From the NCBI GenBank assembly GCA_025558095.1, contig JAIVFI010000006.1, positions 806,001 to 870,000 on the forward strand: 64,000 nt of DNA. The letters are read 5' to 3'. Of this stretch, positions 48,333 to 59,809 are shown piece by piece. The DNA comes from Hyaloraphidium curvatum SAG 235-1. Lineage: Eukaryota > Fungi > Monoblepharomycota. The notes under the pieces are model-generated. The model was given only the letters and a program-made list of their open reading frames with translations, was not told the origin of the DNA and made no database searches. Position 1 is the stretch's first letter. Each line of letters opens with the position of its first letter. The position numbers were made by a program, and so were the translations under genes.

Positions 48333-49754
48333 TCATGCTCCATGCCCGTTCGCCGAGCCCGCGAGCCCCTCCGCGATCCCATCGATGACCGGCAGCACCG
48401 CCCGCACGTCCTCCTCCGTGGTCCTGTAGTTGACGAAGCACACCCGCATGCACGTCGCCCCGTCCACCACTGCGGGGGCGAGGAACACCCTCCCGTCCAC
48501 CTGAACCGCTGTCGCCAGGCGGGCGTTGAACGAATCGACGTCGCCGCTGCCTGCGCATATGTGGCGGAAGCAGATGGTGGAGAGCTGCGGCTCGTGCAAC
48601 AGCTCGAAGGACGGATGCGCGCGCACGGAATCGGCAAACAGCCTCGCGTTGTCGAGGGTGCGGTCGATCCATCGCCTGTACTGGTCGGCACCGTACAACC
48701 TTAAGGCCAGCCACAGCTTGAGTGCGCGGAAGGGCCGCGAGTACTCGAGCGTGCGGTCCACGGCGTTGACGGTGTCGGGCTTGTGCAGCATGTACTTCTC
48801 GTCGTGGGCGAATGCGCGGAGGAGGGAGGACGCGTCGCGGACCATGACGAGGCTGCAGCTCTTTTGCAGGCCCATCCACTTGTGCAGGTCCACGGTGACG
48901 GAGTCGGCGCGGTCGAGCCCGCGGAAGAGGGGAGCGGCGCGCTTGGTGGCAGCTGCTGGCAGGCCGTAGGCGCCGTCGACGTGCAGCCAGACCCCGAACT
49001 CGGCGCACACGTCGGCGATGGCGTTCAGCGGGTCGACGGCGCCGGTGAGGGTGGTGCCCGACGTAGCGATCACGGCGACCGGAGTGATCCCGGAGGCCAC
49101 GTCTCTCGCGAGAGCTTTCTTCAGCTTCGCGACGTCCATGCGGCGGGAGCCGTCGATCGGGATGCGGCGCACGGCGTTACGTCCAAGGCCAGCGGTCTCG
49201 ACAGCGCGAACGTTCGAGTGGTGGGCCTCGTCAGAGCAGTACACGGCGGCCTTTGAGCCTCCGACACCGTCAATCCGCGATCCCGGAATCGCCCGTTCCC
49301 TCGCCGCGAGCACGGCGGTCAGGTTCGACGTCTGCCCGCCGCTTGTAAAGTGCCCGTCGGCCGCGGGGTACCCGATGAACTCGGCCATCCACCGCACGGC
49401 CTGCGCGTCGAGCTTCTCGGCGGTGCCCGCGGCGGTGGCGAGGTTCACGTCGTACACGGCCCCCAGCGCTGCGGCGAGCACGCCGGCCTCGAGCCCCGAG
49501 GAGCCGATGTACGCCAAATAGAGCGGGCGCGACGGCGACACCGACGCCTCGAGCGCGGCCACCGCGTCGCGCAAGGCCGCGTGGCTGTCCCCCGGCGCCT
49601 CCGGCAATGGGTCCGAGAAGTGCGCGACCAGCGCTCCTTCGGGCGTCGGCTCGGCCGGCCGCGGGTGGTTGAACGACGCCCACGCGCCCTCAATGTAGCG
49701 CTCGAGCTCATCGAGGAGCGTTGCACGACCGTCCAAGTGCTCGCTCGTCGCCAT
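48333..49754 (-). CDS. Group II PLP-dependent (aromatic) amino-acid decarboxylase, intronless, bacterial-like
   Basis: FTSGGQTSN, AHHS, GTTLTGAVDPL, WLHVDGAYG, DLHKW (PLP lysine), SRPFRALKLW. Confidence 0.92.
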   Translation of the reverse strand: MATSEHLDGRATLLDELERYIEGAWASFNHPRPAEPTPEGALVAHFSDPLPEAPGDSHAALRDAVAALEASVSPSRPLYLAYIGSSGLEAGVLAAALGAVYDVNLATAAGTAEKLDAQAVRWMAEFIGYPAADGHFTSGGQTSNLTAVLAARERAIPGSRIDGVGGSKAAVYCSDEAHHSNVRAVETAGLGRNAVRRIPIDGSRRMDVAKLKKALARDVASGITPVAVIATSGTTLTGAVDPLNAIADVCAEFGVWLHVDGAYGLPAAATKRAAPLFRGLDRADSVTVDLHKWMGLQKSCSLVMVRDASSLLRAFAHDEKYMLHKPDTVNAVDRTLEYSRPFRALKLWLALRLYGADQYRRWIDRTLDNARLFADSVRAHPSFELLHEPQLSTICFRHICAGSGDVDSFNARLATAVQVDGRVFLAPAVVDGATCMRVCFVNYRTTEEDVRAVLPVIDGIAEGLAGSANGHGA

Positions 49755-50213: not shown

Positions 50214-51500
50214 ATGTTGGCCTTCCTGTCCCGCCCGGGCGGCGTCAAGGACAACCCGCAGCCGCTGCTCCCCGCGCCGGTTAGCGCGGAAACACGCCGC
50301 CGCCGCCGCGTCCGACCCGCGTTTGTCGCGTTCCTCGTGCTCTCCTTTTTCCTGGCGACGGTATACTACCGCTCGATGGAGTCCCCGTTGCCGGTGGACG
50401 TCGCGGACAACGCGTCGGCCCCCGCCCGACTGGACCCGGAGCTCGCCAAGTACCCGGTGGACTACCGCGCCCACGTGTTCTATTACTCGTGGTACGGCAA
50501 CCCCGAGAACAACGGCAAGTGGGTACACTGGAACCACCGCGTGCTGGTGGACAACGGCACGTCCTACGAGCCGCCCGGCGCCATCGGCTCGACCTTCTGG
50601 CCCGCGCTGGGGCCCTACTCGTCGACGTCGCCTTCCACCGTGAAGGAGCACTTTCGCGCGATCAGGAAGGCGGGGATCGGGACGGTGTGCCTGACGTGGT
50701 GGGGCCGCGGCGAGTCGGACGAGAACGGGGAGAGGGGCATGACGGACGCCGTGCTCCCGCTGCTGTTCCGCACGGCCAAGGAAACCGGGCTGCGGATCTC
50801 GTTCCACGTGGAGCCGTACCCGGGGCGGACCGCCAAGTCGGTCGAGCAGGACGTGGCTGACCTGCTGTCCCGGTTCGCGGAATGGGGCAGCGTGCTGGAG
50901 CCCGTGTTCTTTGTCTACGACAGCTACCTCATCTCCAAGGAGAACTGGGCGGCGGTGCTCGCGCCGGGCACCCCGCTCCGCCGCCACCCGCGGAAACCGG
51001 TGCTCCTCGGCCTCGTGGTGAACCAGCCGGACCTCGCAGCCATCGAGCAGGCCGGGTGGGACGGCGCCTACACCTACTTCGCCTCCCACACCTTTGTTTG
51101 GGGCTCCAACCCCCAGAACTGGGCCGCCATCGCCTCCTGGGCCTCCCGCGCGGGCCGCATCTTCGTGCCCAGCGTCGGACCGGGGTACGACGACGAGCGC
51201 GTCAGGCCGTGGAACTCGCGCAACACGCGGCCGCGCGAGGGCGGGGCGTACTACGACCGCGGGTGGGAGGCGGTGCTTGCCCTGGACCCGCTGCCCAAGG
51301 TGGTCTCGGTGACGTCGTGGAACGAGTGGCACGAGGGGACGCAGATCGAGCCGGCGGTGCCGCACGTGGGGGGGAACGGGTACAGGTACGAGGACTACGA
51401 GAAGGACGGGGACGGGAAGGGGGAGGCAGGGGAGGTGTACCTGCGGAGGACGAGGAAGTGGATCGAAAAGTGGAGCAGGGCGGTCGGGCCAGCGAGCTAG
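50214..51500 (+). CDS. GH99 glycoprotein endo-alpha-1,2-mannosidase-like, type II membrane, intronless
   Basis: TM anchor, HVFYYSWYGNP, WNH, PALGPYSS, FHVEPY, YDSY, YTYFA, PSVGPGYDDERVRPWN, TSWNEWHEGTQIEPA. Confidence 0.92.
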   Translation: MLAFLSRPGGVKDNPQPLLPAPVSAETRRRRRVRPAFVAFLVLSFFLATVYYRSMESPLPVDVADNASAPARLDPELAKYPVDYRAHVFYYSWYGNPENNGKWVHWNHRVLVDNGTSYEPPGAIGSTFWPALGPYSSTSPSTVKEHFRAIRKAGIGTVCLTWWGRGESDENGERGMTDAVLPLLFRTAKETGLRISFHVEPYPGRTAKSVEQDVADLLSRFAEWGSVLEPVFFVYDSYLISKENWAAVLAPGTPLRRHPRKPVLLGLVVNQPDLAAIEQAGWDGAYTYFASHTFVWGSNPQNWAAIASWASRAGRIFVPSVGPGYDDERVRPWNSRNTRPREGGAYYDRGWEAVLALDPLPKVVSVTSWNEWHEGTQIEPAVPHVGGNGYRYEDYEKDGDGKGEAGEVYLRRTRKWIEKWSRAVGPAS

Positions 51501-54586: not shown

Positions 54587-56885
54587 CTAATGCGTATGCG
54601 ACTTCTCGGCCTCCGGCGGCGCGCTCCTCGGCGACGGATCCGCCGCGACCGGCGACGGCTCCGTCATCACTGGGGACCCCAGCTGCAGCCCCGACGCCAT
54701 CGACCCCGACGACATCGACCGCCCCACCACGATCCCAGATCCGCCGTACGACCCCGCCCGGTTCACCGCCAGGAAATCCGGGTGGAGCCCCCTCGCCTCC
54801 TCCGCCGCGATGACCGCATGCCCGTGCGGCACCGCGATCTCGATCCCGTCCACCCGCACGATCGACGCCGGCTTCCTCCCGCGCACCCGCGGGCTGAGGT
54901 TCCCCGACGCCCCGCGCATGCCGTCGATCGCCCCCGACGGCGCGCGGAGGCTCCCCGACGCCATCCGCGCGACGTCCGGGGACAGCGAGAACGAAATGGC
55001 GCCGCTGGCCACCCGCGACAGGTCCCCGCTGGCCATCCCCGTTGGATCGGCGGCGGAAAGCGCGCTCGCGGCACGCAGCAGGGCTTCCCGCCGGGCGAGA
55101 TCCTCCATCTCCTCCCTCGCCTTGGCCAGGTCCTCGTCCAGGCTCCTCCGGTCCATCTGCTCCCTCTCCCCCTCCCCTGCCTCGCCCTCGGCCCGCTCAT
55201 CCCCAATCACGTGGATCTTGAGCGCGCGGAACACCCTGTCCGTCGTGCTGATGACGAAATCGTGCGCCTTCCTCCTGAAGCTCCCGGGCTTGCCGATGTC
55301 GATCTGGCCCGCGAGGTACTCCCCCGTCGCCTCCAGCTTCTCCCTCCCGTAGGCGGACTTTTCGAGCTGCGTCCGCACCGAGTACCTTTTCCCGACGTAG
55401 TACGCCATCAGCCAGAGGTTCGCGACGAGGAGCAGCGCAATGAGCAGGCCGCAGGCCAACCAGAGCCACTCGAACGTGCCCTCGGGGAGCTGCACGAGGA
55501 TGGCGATGTTGAAGAGGATCCAGAAAGGGAGGATAAAGCGGCGGCAGAACATGTCCAGCTCGTGGGCTGCGGGGCCGCGTGAGCGGGGCAGGGCCGGCAG
55601 GGGCGCGGGGATCGACCCACCGACGATGTGGTTGTTCTCCCGCTGGACGAGGTGGTGGATGATGGCGACCTCGAGGAGGGAGAAGAAGGCGACGATGAAG
55701 GAGATGAAGACGTACCAGTCGACTTGGGTCTGCGGCGCGGGTGAGCACAGGCTTGGACCTCGAACCGGACGCACGTACCGCATAGTTGACGAGAGGCAAG
55801 CCCGCCGTCACGGAGTTGTAGAAGCTGATGATGGTGAGCACGAGCGTGATGCACAGCCCCAGCCGCTCGGGCACGGCCTCGACGCTGAACCAGTAGCTGA
55901 CGGCGGTCAGGGCGACGAGCAGCCCCAGCGGGAGGAAGCTCTTGAGGTAGTACGATCCCGTCTTGCGAGACATGCGGATGTCGAAGAGGAGCATCTCGAA
56001 CGCCGGCACACCCTCGCGCGCCTCGTAGCGGATCTTGTCCGTGGTGTACGAGAGGTAGTCCCACGTGACGGACGAGAACATGGCCGCGTTGATGCGCGGG
56101 AACACGGGCTCGGACCGCCACTCGAGCGCGAGCTCGAGTTCATTGTAGCTGTAGCTCGTCACGGGCAGCTGCAGCGTCTGCGAGTCGAAGGGAAACTGCG
56201 CCAGCTCGAACTGGTTCCGCAGCTCGACGCGGAACTGCCGCGACCAGAATATGTCGCCCGTGTAGGGGGTCAGCTTGACGACCTCGTTGAGCATCTCGCC
56301 GCCGACTTCGGTGCCGAAGTAGATGTCCGGGGACCAGATGTCGTGCGTGGGGCCCTGTCCGTTGCCCAGGCTCGTCGAGCCCTGGTAGCGCCAGTCCGAG
56401 CCATTGGAGGGCGGGATGTCCTCCTGGGTCACGCGCAGCCGGGGGTCGTTCCAGTACAGGCGGAGGAACACGTCGATGTTGAAGGTCGAGGCGACGGGGT
56501 CTATAGAGTAGAGGCGATTGACGCGCAGCTGGGCCCGCACCAGCACGGGCGGGCCGAGGAATCCGGGCCGCGTCATTGCGTCGTACCCGGTGCCCTCGCC
56601 CACGGTGTTGGAGACCAGGACTTGGGTCGCATTGTCCGCGGAGAACCCTTCGAAGAGCCGCGGCGCGAGCCGGCGGCCGTCCGCGGCATCCCCGCAGTTT
56701 TGAGGCTCCGGCCGGGTCGGGTCGATCGCCGTCACTTTCAGAGAGCGTGGCCGGTGGCCCCTGGAGCCCGGCTGGCCGGCCAGCAGCGGGGCGGAAGTGG
56801 CCGACCGGGCAGCGTCCCCGGGCGTCCCCAGCGCCGCCAGCACCGCGAGCAGCAGCGCGGCCGCGGCGGTGGCGAGTCCGCGCAT
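54587..56885 (-). CDS. Cys-less (Pro-loop) pentameric ligand-gated ion channel subunit A (introns 55730-55778, 55567-55620)
   Basis: Signal peptide; YWNDPRL, IWSPDIYF, FPFDSQTL, SYSY; M1 YYLKSFLP, M2 PERLGLCITLVLT, LPLVNY-A-TQVDWY M3, M4, an extra TM and a long tail. Confidence 0.9.
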
Positions 56886-57089
56886 CGTCCTCAACAGAGT
56901 ATTATGTTTTCCGGGCGGGAGACGGCGGCAGTCAGGTGTCGGCCGCGGGCTCCAAGGTGCGTCACGCCCGCCATCCCGAAATCAGGGACGCGCAATGGCA
57001 TCCTCCGTCGACGCCTCCGAGCACCTGCGGTCCCGCATCTGAGCTTTCTGAGTTCCCGCTGAGTGACTGCCCACCGGCCGGCGCCCGGA

Positions 57090-58687
57090 ATGGTGTCGCG
57101 GCAGTGTCTCCCGGCCGCGGGTTTCCTTGCCGCCCTCGCCCTTCTCGGGGTGGCGGTTCTGCCCCGCCCCGTCTCCGCGGTCGTGGACGGGTGGGCGGCC
57201 GAGAATGCTACGGCACGCATCTTCGCGGACATCGCCGGGGCCGGCTACGACGCCCGCACCCGACCTGGGTTCTCGCGCGCACCGACAAACATCTCGGCGC
57301 AGTTCAGGCTCAACAGCCTGTTTGCCGTGGACCCCGTGGCGACCAGCTTCACCCTGGACGTCGGGCTGCTGCTGCAGTGGACCGACCCGCGGCTGCTCCT
57401 CGACGTGCCGGGCTCGTACCCGCTCCCGCCGACGCAGGACATCCGCGTGGTGGGCTCCGTGGACCTGGGCAACGGCCATGGACCCCCGCACTTTGTCTGG
57501 ACCCCGGACGTCTACTTCGAGAACCAGATCTCCCGCACCGTGCTCTCGGAGATCGCCAAGTTCAACCCCGCCACGGGCGGCGTGCTCCTCCGCCGGCACT
57601 TCCTCGTCGAGCTCAAGGGCGACTTTGACTTCCACTCGTACCCGTTCGACAGGCAGTGGCTGCCCGTGTGGCTCACGCCGTGGTCGTACAACTCGGACGA
57701 GGTCACGATGTACTGGGCGCCCAGCCCAGTGTGGCCGGTGGTCAACGGATCGACGTTCAAGCACACCGTCTGGGACTTTGAGACCTACACCATCGAGCGC
57801 GAGGTGTTCTACTCGCGGGAAAACCTGCCCCCGTACGACCGGCTCAAGATGAACATCCTCATCTCGCGGCGGTCGACTTCCTACATCATCAAGGTCATCC
57901 TGCCCATCATCCTGCTCGTCTCCCTGACGGCGGTCAACTTCTGGCTGTCCGTCGACGCCGTCACGGACCGGCTCGCGCTCGTCATCACCCTCATCCTCAC
58001 CATCGTGTCCTTCTACAACTCGGTCTCGCAGGAGCTGCCCTTGGTCAACTACCCCGTGGGTCCCGACGCGCTTTACCCAGATACTGCGCTCACCCGGCCC
58101 CGTTCCAGACGACGGTCGACTACTACGTCGTCGCCGCCTTCCTGGTCGTCTTCCTCTCCCTCATCGAGGTCGCCACCGTGCACCACCACGTGCAGCGCGA
58201 GGGCGACGTCGTCCTCGCCACCGAGCTCGACTACTTCTCCCGCAGGACGATGCTCCCCGTGTGGGCCGCGTTCCAGCTCGTCCTCGTGCAGACGGGGCAG
58301 TGGCTCGGGATTTTGACTGGGGTGATCATCTTTTCGATCATCATATTCAATGCATGGATCATGAAGTACCGCATCGTGCGGCGTCGCCAGCCCCGGGGCG
58401 GGGGCGGCCCGCCACCGTGGCCCGCGTGGGTTGAGCGTCTGGGCAAGGCGACGGATGCGGGGTACGCGTTCTTGGGGATGAAGCCGCCCGTGAGCGACGA
58501 GGAGAGCGCGGTGCGGGTGCTGCGGGAGCAGGCGGACGCGATCAGGGTGCGGGTGGAGGAGGCGGAGAGGAGGGCGGCGGGGTGGGATGGGTTGGATGCG
58601 GTGAGGGTGGACGATGCGGGGTGGGTGTCTGGTGCGGAAGGGGAAGGTGGCGGTCGAGACCGGGGGCTGTGGGACGAGAAGGGGTAG
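57090..58687 (+). CDS. Cys-less (Pro-loop) pentameric ligand-gated ion channel subunit B (intron 58056-58108)
   Basis: Signal peptide; YDARTRP, WTDPRL, VWTPDVYFEN, YPFDRQ, WSY; M1 YIIKVILP, M2 TDRLALVITLILT, LPLVNY-P-TTVDYY M3, M4 and an extra TM. Confidence 0.9.
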
Positions 58688-58855
58688 ATGCGGGGGGTGA
58701 TTGTCGCATCCATTCCGCTGCACCGAATAGCCACGGCGTTGACTTCGAGCCTCGGATGTTTTCGGGCGAGCAGCACCTGGAAAGCAAGCGGAGATTCGAG
58801 CACGCTTCGGGCTGTTGGGCCGCGCGTGCCGATGCGCGCAGCCGTCCGCGCAAAC

Positions 58856-59809
58856 ATGCTCTCCCGCATTCCCCCTCGCACCGTCGTCTGCACCGTTTTC
58901 GACCCGTTCGCCTCCTCTCCGCGCGATGCGATGCCCGAACGCCGCACCGTGCGGCTGCCGCCCCCGCCTTCGCCTTCCTTGGCCCCCGCCGACGCGCCGA
59001 GTGAATCCTCACCCCGAACGTTTCTGGCCTACTTCCCGGGCTTCATGTCGCTCCGCAACTCCGTCAAACCCGAATTCCTGCTCTCGAAGTGCCGCGAGCT
59101 CACCGCGATGGGACGCCCTTTGGGCTTCTTCGCGCCGGACTGGTCCGGCACCGGCGACTCCGCCTGCGCAGCAACCGCCTCCCACCACGACCACCCACCC
59201 TTGGACTTCAAGGACTGCGGCATCGACACCTGGCTCTCCGACGCCGTCAGCACCCTCCTCTCCGCCCTCCGCCCGTCCCCCTCTTCACCCGCGGACGTGT
59301 TCCTCGCCGGCGCCAGCATGGGCGCCTGGCTCGCCCCCCTGACCGCCGCCGAGCTGCGCAGTACCCCCGGATTGAACATCAGGGGGTTGATGCTGCTCTG
59401 CCCGGGGTTCGATTTCGCTTCGCTGCTGTTCCGCGGGGACCCGGCCGTCGGCGCCGCCAGGAGGGCCGAGCTGGACGAGAAGGGCAAGTTCGTGGTGCCG
59501 AGCGAGTACCAGCCGGGTGGGTACGTGATCAGCAGGCGGCTTGTGGAGTCGGCGGAGGAGCTGGCGCTGCTGGACGGATCGGACTACGCGGCGGGGGTGC
59601 GCGAGGCGGTGAGGGGGATCCCGGTTTCGGTGCTCTACGCCAAGGACGACCAGAACGTGCCGCCGGAGCACATGGCGAGGGCCGCGGCGTGGTTCGATGC
59701 GGGGGATGTGAGGGAGGTGGTGGCGCTGGAGGAGGGAGGGCACAGGCTGAGCGGGGAGGGGGAGCTGCAAGTGATCTGGGAGTGCTTTGGGAGGCTTGCC
59801 TCGCTGTAG
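58856..59809 (+). CDS. Alpha/beta hydrolase, ABHD10-like
   Basis: FPGFMS, DWSGTGDS, GASMG nucleophile, DQNVP, GGHRLS. The start could instead be 58931. Confidence 0.82.
   Translation: MLSRIPPRTVVCTVFDPFASSPRDAMPERRTVRLPPPPSPSLAPADAPSESSPRTFLAYFPGFMSLRNSVKPEFLLSKCRELTAMGRPLGFFAPDWSGTGDSACAATASHHDHPPLDFKDCGIDTWLSDAVSTLLSALRPSPSSPADVFLAGASMGAWLAPLTAAELRSTPGLNIRGLMLLCPGFDFASLLFRGDPAVGAARRAELDEKGKFVVPSEYQPGGYVISRRLVESAEELALLDGSDYAAGVREAVRGIPVSVLYAKDDQNVPPEHMARAAAWFDAGDVREVVALEEGGHRLSGEGELQVIWECFGRLASL

What the first reader, a model, noticed from the sequence alone, without database searches (positions are those of the whole stretch)
54587..58687. Divergent pair of Cys-less pentameric ligand-gated ion channel subunits in a fungus
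Seen: two paralogous pLGIC genes head-to-head with only 204 bp between start codons. Both have signal peptides, WxDPRL, WxPD and the F/Y-P-F-D Pro-loop without flanking cysteines, and both have an intron at the same position (after LPLVNYx). Known: pLGICs are the neurotransmitter-receptor superfamily; Cys-less members occur in bacteria and protists, and the family is absent from model yeasts and moulds. Inference: the shared intron shows a duplication inside this eukaryotic lineage rather than contamination, and a bidirectional promoter suggests co-expression as a heteropentameric chemosensory channel, possibly for zoospore or environmental sensing.
Basis: partly seen in the sequence, partly recalled or inferred. 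Interest (0 to 1): 0.82.

Follow-up and report, generated by a model that had tools for sequence, protein, structure and literature searches.

The report
Fungal neurotransmitter-receptor-type channel gene pair
The aquatic fungus Hyaloraphidium curvatum expresses two back-to-back genes for channel subunits of the animal glycine/GABA-receptor superfamily, a family a 2016 survey reported absent from fungi, and they carry an extra fifth membrane helix not mentioned in the papers I could search.

Summary
Two paralogous genes (44% identical) for pentameric ligand-gated ion channels lie head-to-head, with 204 bp between their ATGs (56885 and 57090). Both pass the Pfam cut-offs and both lack the Cys-loop cysteines. 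The AlphaFold model of gene A superposes on GABA-A/glycine receptor subunits (Z 31, rmsd 1.9 Å).

Spliced transcript contigs confirm the shared intron after LPLVNY[A/P] in both genes. They also reveal a second 54-nt intron in gene A.

The organism is Hyaloraphidium curvatum. It has nine such genes, which form one clade. Six of them sit in three head-to-head pairs.

Relatives occur in at least seven other chytrid genera. GenBank names several of them automatically, for example "Glycine receptor subunit alpha-3". I found no paper describing them, and Jaiteh et al. 2016 reported none in Fungi.

- A fifth transmembrane helix follows M4, with an inferred cytosolic C-terminal tail. It is present in every complete chytrid homologue examined.
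- The pore motif is PAR (anion type) in other chytrids but PER/TDR in H. curvatum.
- The B-type genes have lost the loop-D Phe/Arg that their A-type partners keep.

The heteromer idea is plausible but untested. The zoospore idea is unlikely, because as far as I know this species has no zoospores.

The parts
55779..56885 (-). Gene A (KAI9029513.1), exon 1. It encodes the signal-peptide-like N-terminus, the extracellular ligand-binding domain, M1, M2 and the M2-M3 linker up to LPLVNYA.
   Evidence: ORF and Pfam LBD/memb hits. PDB best match is glycine receptor alpha, E 1e-30. RNA contigs cover it without joints.
55730..55778 (-). Gene A intron 1: 49 nt, GTACGT..CAG, phase 0, after LPLVNYA.
   Evidence: Read from the sequence. 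Skipped in a transcript contig with CT..AC ends on the plus strand.
55621..55729 (-). Gene A exon 2: M3 and the start of the short M3-M4 loop.
   Evidence: Weak Neur_chan_memb hit to profile positions 57-88.
55567..55620 (-). Gene A intron 2: 54 nt, GTGGGT..CAG, in frame. It is retained as 18 extra residues in the GenBank model.
   Evidence: Skipped in the transcript contig. Sequence read. It coincides with the 18-residue gap in the A-versus-B alignment.
54587..55566 (-). Gene A exon 3 (stop included). It holds M4 (about 55493-55564), the extra M5 helix (about 55385-55471), and a cytosolic tail of about 265 residues. The tail has a segment conserved among A-type paralogues and Ser/Gly-rich repeats.
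   Evidence: The PDB superposition ends at model residue about 380, which is the end of M4.
56886..57089 (.). 204-bp divergent intergenic region between the two ATGs. It presumably holds both promoters and 5' UTRs.
   Evidence: One RNA-derived contig runs across it from gene A into gene B. No sequence is conserved with the intergenic regions of the other two head-to-head pairs.
57090..58055 (+). Gene B, exon 1: signal-peptide-like N-terminus, ligand-binding domain, M1, M2, up to LPLVNYP.
   Evidence: Covered by a transcript contig.
58056..58108 (+). Gene B intron: 53 nt, GTGGGT..CAG, phase 0, at the same codon position as gene A intron 1.
   Evidence: Skipped with GT..AG ends in a transcript contig.
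58109..58687 (+). Gene B exon 2 (stop included): M3, short loop, M4 (about 58241-58291), the extra M5 (about 58301-58369), and a tail of about 105 residues that starts with a basic cluster.
   Evidence: RNA contig support reaches only to 58318.

Best explanation

They belong to a family found across chytrid fungi. Its nearest solved relatives are animal glycine and GABA-A receptors.

Each subunit has the usual extracellular beta-sandwich and helices M1-M4, with only a very short M3-M4 loop. A fifth transmembrane helix then follows. By inference this returns the chain to the cytoplasm, so the cytosolic domain sits at the C-terminus instead of between M3 and M4.

Inferred function: a plasma-membrane channel opened by an extracellular small molecule. 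In subunit A the ligand is probably a carboxylate-bearing amine or amino acid, because the loop-D Phe/Arg and loop-E Ser of the glycine receptor site are kept.

Inferred selectivity: cations rather than anions. The ancestral Pro-Ala-Arg pore entrance of other chytrids is Pro-Glu-Arg in eight H. curvatum genes and Thr-Asp-Arg in gene B.

The A/B pair was probably duplicated as a unit. A second A-type/B-type head-to-head pair lies on contig C37. Subunit B may therefore work as a partner that offers only its principal face to an A subunit. This last step is a hypothesis (about one chance in three).
For: Family and fold:
- Pfam hits are above the cut-offs. Glycine receptor alpha matches at E 1e-30 for A and 8e-21 for B.
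- The AlphaFold model has pLDDT 84.3 and pTM 0.76. Foldseek gives TM 0.89 on the glycine receptor alpha-3 chain.
- VIA-align gives Z 31.2, rmsd 1.9 Å over 326 of 333 residues, spanning model residues 9-380.

Expression and splicing: contigs skip all three introns with GT..AG ends.

Organism and spread:
- Gene A is KAI9029513.1 of Hyaloraphidium curvatum.
- The genome has nine genes.
- Relatives are found in Blyttiomyces, Globomyces, Boothiomyces, Terramyces, Podochytrium and Zopfochytrium. They sit among ordinary eukaryotic genes.

Fifth helix:
- A hydrophobic segment after M4 is present in every complete chytrid homologue in the alignment and in a choanoflagellate.
- It is modelled as a helix in both H. 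curvatum A (382-419) and Blyttiomyces (374-424).
- The M4-M5 loop has no basic residues, and a Lys/Arg cluster follows M5 (sequences).

Pore and binding-site residues: alignment.

Pair duplication:
- B and C37-plus are sisters with 96/89 and 94/87 support.
- A is most similar to C37-minus (61-63% identity).
- Collinear homology between the two loci is limited to the two genes.
- The ATG-to-ATG gaps are 204 and 207 bp.
Against: - No functional data exist. Ligand, selectivity, stoichiometry and membrane location are all inferred from residues and from mutagenesis of animal receptors that I recall from memory.
- The tree does not resolve A plus C37-minus as a clade (AU p 0.09 and 0.41: neither rejected nor shown).
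- The C1 head-to-head pair contains two close relatives of one type, so this arrangement can arise without any heteromer logic.
- The two chytrid homologues whose loci I examined are solitary genes.
- The M5 helix has only moderate model confidence (pLDDT about 77-81 in A, 68-79 in Blyttiomyces). Its membrane orientation could not be checked from coordinates.
- The modelled protein is the GenBank model, which carries 18 intron-encoded residues in the M3-M4 loop.
Confidence: 0.75

Rival explanations
1. A and B are independent homopentameric channels. The head-to-head layout is only the footprint of local inverted duplication and says nothing about co-assembly.
For: - The family grows by local duplication. 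The C6 tandem pair is nearly identical, and the C1 head-to-head pair has both members in one subclade.
- The three intergenic regions share no sequence.
- The Blyttiomyces and Globomyces genes examined are solitary.
- Many pLGICs with intact interfaces are homomers (general knowledge).
Against: - Both B-type genes lost the loop-D Phe/Arg and have a non-Ser residue at the loop-E position. They keep the loop-B aromatic residues and the loop-C Arg motif. That pattern fits a subunit needing a partner for its complementary face.
- The A-type/B-type adjacency is found twice, with the B genes as sisters.
Confidence: 0.45
2. Gene B is a decaying or non-channel copy, for example a silent or regulatory relic of the duplication.
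For: B has the longest branch in the clade (0.72-0.77). It differs at the otherwise uniform pore entrance (TDR versus PER) and at loop D.
Against: - The reading frame is intact over about 514 codons, and the transcript is present and correctly spliced.
- All superfamily-invariant residues are kept: the Pro-loop Pro and Asp, the WxDPRL and WxPD motifs, the 0' Arg and the 9' Leu.
- Its sister, C37-plus, is also intact over the stretches I translated.
Confidence: 0.07
3. The genes are contamination or a recent transfer from an animal or bacterium, not native fungal genes.
For: Best solved matches are animal receptors. Jaiteh et al. 2016 found none in Fungi.
Against: - The genes have spliceosomal introns with the same GT..GCTCAC..CAG pattern.
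- Their G+C of about 66% matches the rest of the window.
- They lie on a 910-kb contig among ordinary genes.
- There are nine paralogues on four contigs.
- The nearest relatives are other chytrids, forming one clade with 96-97% support.
Confidence: 0.02

Closest known systems
Animal glycine and GABA-A receptor subunits (anion-selective Cys-loop receptors)
   Same: - Best sequence and structure matches: E 1e-30, about 24-26% identity, Z 31, rmsd 1.9-2.1 Å over the whole four-helix subunit.
- Subunit A keeps the loop-D Phe-Leu-Arg, the loop-E Ser and the loop-B aromatic residues.
- The M4 motif is of the GABA/Gly type (my own recollection of that motif). M2 has 0' Arg, 2' Gly, 6' Thr and 9' Leu.
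- Other chytrid members even keep the Pro-Ala-Arg pore entrance.
   Different: - No Cys-loop disulfide and no loop-C cysteines.
- The M3-M4 loop is about 15-20 residues instead of a large intracellular domain.
- There is an extra fifth transmembrane helix and a C-terminal tail.
- H. curvatum has Glu/Asp at -1' (PER, TDR).
- A lineage-specific insertion of about 15 residues, with an NGS site, follows the WxDPRL motif.
Cys-less 'Pro-loop' receptors of unicellular eukaryotes (Jaiteh et al. 2016, PMC4795631), e.g. in Monosiga and Capsaspora
   Same: - Cys-less, from unicellular opisthokonts, with sparse distribution and lineage-specific expansions.
- A choanoflagellate (Mylnosiga) protein is among the nearest non-fungal relatives. 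It also has a hydrophobic segment after M4.
   Different: - That survey explicitly found none in Fungi.
- It does not use the terms I searched for a fifth helix or a C-terminal domain.
Bacterial GLIC and ELIC
   Same: Cys-less, with a very short M3-M4 loop.
   Different: - Among the 60 best PDB rows, GLIC appears only as chimeras carrying animal glycine or GABA receptor parts.
- GLIC and ELIC have four helices (general knowledge).
- The fungal genes have introns, signal peptides and long tails.
Heteromeric animal receptors encoded by clustered genes (e.g. GABA-A receptor gene clusters)
   Same: Paralogous subunit genes are kept adjacent, some head-to-head. One subunit type lacks agonist-site residues on one face.
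   Different: Co-assembly here is only inferred. The pair is 4 kb long with 204 bp between start codons, and this organism has no nervous system.

Membership tests
Pentameric ligand-gated ion channel (Pro-loop receptor) superfamily | Sequence match to the ligand-binding-domain and transmembrane profiles above the curated cut-offs | tested here: met
   PF02931 scores 78.7 bits (A) and 68.5 bits (B) against a cut-off of 26. PF02932 scores 33.4 and 34.7 bits against 28.1.
Pentameric ligand-gated ion channel (Pro-loop receptor) superfamily | Subunit fold: extracellular beta-sandwich followed by the four helices M1-M4 | tested here: met
   AlphaFold model of A has pLDDT 84.3. Foldseek TM is 0.89 on the target. 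VIA-align gives Z 31.2 with 326/333 residues at 1.9 Å. B was not folded, because no unspliced reference covers it whole.
Pentameric ligand-gated ion channel (Pro-loop receptor) superfamily | Conserved Pro-loop proline/aspartate and the residues at the interface of the two domains | tested here: met
   FPFD (A) and YPFD (B). The columns invariant across 101 homologues (Pro, Pro, Asp, Arg, Pro) are all present.
Pentameric ligand-gated ion channel (Pro-loop receptor) superfamily | Assembly as a pentamer around an M2-lined pore, with opening by a ligand | not testable with these tools
   Only single chains can be folded here, and there is no electrophysiology. The M2 pattern (0' Arg, 6' Thr, 9' Leu) is present.
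Cys-loop receptors in the strict sense | Disulfide-forming cysteine pair 13 residues apart flanking the Pro-loop | tested here: not met
   The positions aligned with glycine receptor Cys138 and Cys152 are Asn/Leu in A and Gly/Leu in B. They are non-Cys in all nine paralogues and in the other chytrids.
Anion-selective glycine/GABA-A-type subfamily | Pro-Ala-Arg at positions -2' to 0' of M2 | tested here: not met
   A has Pro-Glu-Arg and B has Thr-Asp-Arg. The other chytrid homologues and Mylnosiga do have Pro-Ala-Arg.
Anion-selective glycine/GABA-A-type subfamily | Loop-D arginine that binds the agonist carboxylate (glycine receptor Arg65) | tested here: inconclusive
   Present in A, in C37-minus and in most other chytrids (Phe-Leu-Arg). 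Absent in B (Gly-Leu-Leu) and C37-plus (Glu-Leu-Thr). The residue's role here is inferred, not shown.
Obligate heteromeric receptor | Two subunit types that co-assemble and are co-expressed | tested here: inconclusive
   Two types exist, and each B is paired with an A. Both are present in one RNA run. Co-assembly and correlated expression were not testable.

The most novel reading that the evidence does not exclude
Chytrid fungi retain a sister lineage of the animal glycine/GABA-A receptor branch. That would place this 'inhibitory receptor' lineage before the animal-fungal split.

This lineage rebuilt the subunit as a five-helix protein whose intracellular domain hangs from the C-terminus.

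In H. curvatum it switched from anion to cation selectivity. It also split into an agonist-binding A subunit and an accessory B subunit, kept together as a divergently transcribed unit encoding an obligate heteromeric amino-acid or amine sensor.
Probability: 0.2. Interest if true: 0.8.

Novelty: new variant of a known kind. Interest (0 to 1): 0.62.

Why it matters
These channels are the fast neurotransmitter receptors of animals, and their origin before nervous systems is an open question. The main survey (Jaiteh et al. 2016) listed Fungi as lacking them.

A fungal clade whose closest solved relatives are glycine and GABA-A receptors offers three things:
- An outgroup for dating that branch.
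- A natural example of a charge change at the -1' pore position within one family.
- A subunit architecture with a fifth helix and a C-terminal intracellular domain, which could show how the intracellular domain can be relocated.

The genes are short and nearly intron-free, and the organism grows in culture. They are therefore practical targets for expression, electrophysiology and cryo-EM.

Tried and rejected
- **Word-index protein search, gene B exon 1**. It returned only the window's own ORF, because the 8000-candidate limit was swamped. This blank is uninformative. The exhaustive HMMER search found 3841 relatives.
- **Pair duplicated as a unit.** The tree on a 160-column single-exon block, and the one on 267 columns, resolved B plus C37-plus but not A plus C37-minus. 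The AU test did not reject that clade (p 0.09 and 0.41), so the point rests on identity and collinearity.
- **Shared promoter element.** Alignment of the three divergent intergenic regions showed nothing conserved.
- **Segmental duplication beyond the pair.** tblastx of 16 kb of the window against the C37 locus showed homology only over the two genes.
- **Nearby PLP decarboxylase as ligand source** (48336-49754). It is a group II enzyme nearest to bacterial diaminobutyrate, DesA and DOPA decarboxylases, but far below every equivalog cut-off. It lies 5 kb away with a GH99 gene in between. Linkage to the channel is unsupported.
- **Protein Atlas search**. It only repeated the family name.
- **Literature searches** for Cys-loop or pLGIC together with chytrid genera, Hyaloraphidium, or a fifth transmembrane helix found nothing relevant.
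- **Joined exons.** Exons were searched one at a time by reference. The only full-length protein used is GenBank's own model of gene A, which retains intron 2. Gene B was therefore never folded or searched as a whole.
Full report
**What is in the sequence**

The stretch 54587-58687 holds two divergently oriented genes.
- Gene A runs on the minus strand from the ATG at 56885 to the stop at 54587.
- Gene B runs on the plus strand from the ATG at 57090 to the stop at 58687.
- Exactly 204 bp lie between the two start codons.

The first exon of each gene matches Pfam Neur_chan_LBD (78.7 and 68.5 bits, cut-off 26). Each also matches the start of Neur_chan_memb (33.4 and 34.7 bits, cut-off 28.1). The two first exons are 44% identical (E 2e-90). 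The downstream exons are 38% identical over M3-M5.

The two positions aligned with the glycine receptor Cys-loop cysteines are Asn/Leu in A and Gly/Leu in B.

**Gene structure and expression**

Reading the DNA gave a phase-0 intron directly after LPLVNYA in A (55730-55778, 49 nt). It gave one after LPLVNYP in B (58056-58108, 53 nt).

One public run holds 81% of the sampled words of the stretch. Laid on the window, its contigs skip exactly these two introns with GT..AG ends. They also skip a third stretch, 55567-55620 in gene A (54 nt, in frame). The run's type is only guessed as RNA, but contigs that lack introns must derive from spliced RNA.

Both genes are therefore transcribed and spliced as modelled. 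All three introns carry a GCTCAC element upstream of the CAG acceptor.

One contig runs from inside gene A, across the intergenic 204 bp, into gene B. In an unstranded assembly this means only that transcribed sequence covers the whole spacer. No contig covers 58319-58687, so the 3' end of B rests on the open reading frame alone.

GenBank's model of gene A (KAI9029513.1, 749 aa, "hypothetical protein") retains the second intron as 18 extra residues.

Exons were searched singly by reference. The only full-length protein used is that GenBank model.

**Organism and family size**

Gene A is identical to a protein of Hyaloraphidium curvatum. This agrees with the name given in earlier notes of this scan.

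A six-frame search of the genome with PF02931 found ten matches, which belong to nine genes:
- the window pair;
- a second head-to-head pair on contig C37 (207 bp between ATGs);
- a third head-to-head pair on C1 (308 bp);
- a same-strand, nearly identical tandem pair on C6 near 45-47 kb;
- a single gene on C39.

Seven of the nine genes have the LPLVNY intron. The two C37 genes lack it and have other introns instead.

**Relatives**

An exhaustive HMMER search of 1.84 billion representative proteins gave 3841 hits at E ≤ 0.001.

After the H. curvatum paralogues, the nearest named proteins are from other chytrids:
- Blyttiomyces (42% identity);
- Globomyces pollinis-pini and Globomyces sp. (at least five genes);
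- three Boothiomyces strains or species;
- Terramyces, Podochytrium and Zopfochytrium.

After these come a choanoflagellate (Mylnosiga) and animal GABA/glycine-type subunits.

Several of the chytrid proteins already carry automatic names, such as [quoted passage not shown] or "Glycine receptor subunit alpha-3". The Blyttiomyces and Globomyces genes lie singly among ordinary eukaryotic genes such as threonine synthase, a tRNA synthetase and TFIIE.

In trees of a single-exon block (160 columns) and of a longer set (267 columns):
- the nine H. curvatum genes form one clade (100/100);
- that clade sits with the other chytrid sequences (97/95), or as sister to them.

Contamination or recent transfer can be set aside.

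The Blyttiomyces gene has an intron 5 nt away from the H. curvatum LPLVNY intron, in phase 1 within the Tyr codon. This hints at an old intron, but it is not the same position.

**Fold**

The AlphaFold model used residues 75-560 of the GenBank protein with a 101-sequence alignment. It has mean pLDDT 84.3 and pTM 0.76.
- Foldseek puts human glycine receptor alpha-3 first (E 4e-28, TM 0.89 normalised on the target).
- VIA-align gives Z 31.2, rmsd 1.9 Å over 326 of 333 residues of a GABA-A beta-3 chain. The match spans model residues 9 to about 380, that is, the beta-sandwich plus M1-M4.

**A fifth helix**

The superposition ends at M4, but the protein goes on.
- After a loop of about six residues without Lys or Arg comes a 25-residue hydrophobic segment. 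It is modelled as helix 382-419 with pLDDT about 77-81.
- Directly after that helix comes a cluster of Lys/Arg.
- Gene B has the same layout.

By the positive-inside rule (general knowledge), this segment crosses the membrane from outside to inside. That would place the C-terminal tail in the cytoplasm: about 265 residues in A and about 105 in B.

The M3-M4 loop, which forms the large intracellular domain in animal receptors, is only about 15-20 residues here.

A hydrophobic segment after M4 (Kyte-Doolittle mean above 1.6 over 19 residues) is present in every complete chytrid homologue in the alignment. It is also in Mylnosiga and in several unnamed environmental proteins: 20 of 101 aligned sequences in all. 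It is absent from the animal sequences examined.

A second model, of the Blyttiomyces protein, again shows five helices (M5 at 374-424).

I could not inspect coordinates, so the packing and orientation of M5 are inferred.

Jaiteh et al. 2016 does not contain the terms I searched for such a feature. No paper in the library combines pentameric channels with a fifth transmembrane segment.

**Pore and binding-site residues (alignment)**

At the cytoplasmic mouth of M2:
- the other chytrids, Mylnosiga and the two animal glycine-receptor-like sequences in the alignment have Pro-Ala-Arg;
- eight H. curvatum genes have Pro-Glu-Arg;
- gene B has Thr-Asp-Arg.

From what I recall of glycine receptor mutagenesis, a Glu at -1' is the main determinant that turns anion channels into cation channels. 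I therefore infer a lineage-specific switch to cation permeability.

In loop D, the Phe-Leu-Arg of glycine receptors (Phe63/Arg65, mapped through the alignment) is kept in gene A, in C37-minus and in most other chytrids. It is Gly-Leu-Leu in gene B and Glu-Leu-Thr in C37-plus.

The loop-E Ser (Ser129) is kept in A and is Arg in B. The loop-B aromatic residues and a loop-C Arg-Glu/Gln-Gly-x-Pro motif are kept in both.

A thus looks able to supply a complementary face of the amino-acid-binding type. B looks able to supply only a principal face.

**Is the pair a functional unit?**

In favour:
- The two B-type genes (window B and C37-plus) are sisters (96/89 and 94/87).
- Each lies head-to-head with an A-type gene that keeps Phe-Leu-Arg.
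- Those two A-type genes are each other's most similar paralogues (61-63% identity).
- The homology between the two loci is collinear and confined to the two genes.
- Both window genes are in one RNA run.

Against or neutral:
- The A plus C37-minus clade is neither recovered nor rejected (AU p 0.09 and 0.41).
- The C1 head-to-head pair consists of two members of one subclade, and the C6 pair is a plain tandem.
- The three spacers share no sequence.
- The two chytrid homologues whose loci I examined are solitary genes.

I rate the heteromer at roughly one in three. Independent homomers are somewhat more likely on present evidence.

General environmental chemosensing remains open.

**Comparison with what is known, and novelty**

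The proteins meet every testable criterion of the pentameric ligand-gated channel superfamily. They fail the Cys-loop criterion, so they belong with the Cys-less Pro-loop receptors.

Jaiteh et al. 2016 (PMC4795631) surveyed all kingdoms and stated that none were detected in Fungi. Seven further literature searches found no description of them in chytrids.

The presence of the domain in chytrid proteomes is nevertheless visible in GenBank product names. The bare occurrence is therefore unreported in papers rather than unknown to databases.

I did not find the following described:
- the five-helix topology with a C-terminal tail;
- the Pro-Ala-Arg to Pro-Glu-Arg change within the fungal family;
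- the A/B specialisation in paired genes.

I class the finding as a new variant of a known kind.

Noticed in passing
window 48336-49754 (-): An intronless 473-residue group II PLP-dependent decarboxylase (PF00282, 212 bits). Its nearest matches are bacterial diaminobutyrate, DesA and DOPA decarboxylases, all far below the NCBIfam equivalog cut-offs, so the substrate is unknown. It lies 5 kb from gene A with a GH99 gene in between. Any link to the channel's ligand is speculative.
   Followed up: partly
window 50214-51497 (+): Open reading frame with a full-length match to glycosyl hydrolase family 99 (endo-alpha-mannosidase type), 346 bits.
   Followed up: no
window 58688-59806 (+): An ORF starting directly after the stop codon of gene B, with weak alpha/beta-hydrolase matches (PF12697, 35 bits) in its second half. 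A separate RNA contig begins at 58854, so the true start is probably further downstream.
   Followed up: no
window, left of 54400: The RNA-derived contig that covers gene A continues for 4121 further letters to the left of 54400. Transcribed sequence is therefore continuous into the neighbouring gene or genes. This suggests overlapping or abutting 3' ends.
   Followed up: no
G000 C37:166-169 kb (L014), C1:279-283 kb (L013), C6:45-49 kb (L011), C39:459-461 kb (L012): Seven further pLGIC genes. Several GenBank models look truncated or misjoined. KAI9005000.1 stops inside M2. KAI9034082.1 runs out of frame after the LPLVNY intron. KAI9029513.1 retains an intron.
   Followed up: partly
L015:8001-9994 (Blyttiomyces sp. 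JEL0837, KAJ3331454.1): This distant chytrid homologue has about seven introns. One lies within the Tyr codon of LPKVNY, 5 nt from the H. curvatum intron position. This could be an old intron that slid, or an independent gain. The Globomyces homologue in L016 is intronless.
   Followed up: partly
P0015 / P0162 (Boothiomyces): Two Boothiomyces homologues carry an extra N-terminal region of about 150 residues. The precomputed Pfam list adds PF07986 to the two channel domains. This may be an N-terminal add-on domain or a gene-model fusion.
   Followed up: no
window 54587-55300 (-), tail of gene A: The C-terminal tail contains a segment conserved among the A-type paralogues just after M5. This is followed by Ser/Gly-rich repeats of the form (M/V)ASG..., which look like phosphorylation-prone low-complexity sequence. 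No Pfam domain was found there.
   Followed up: partly
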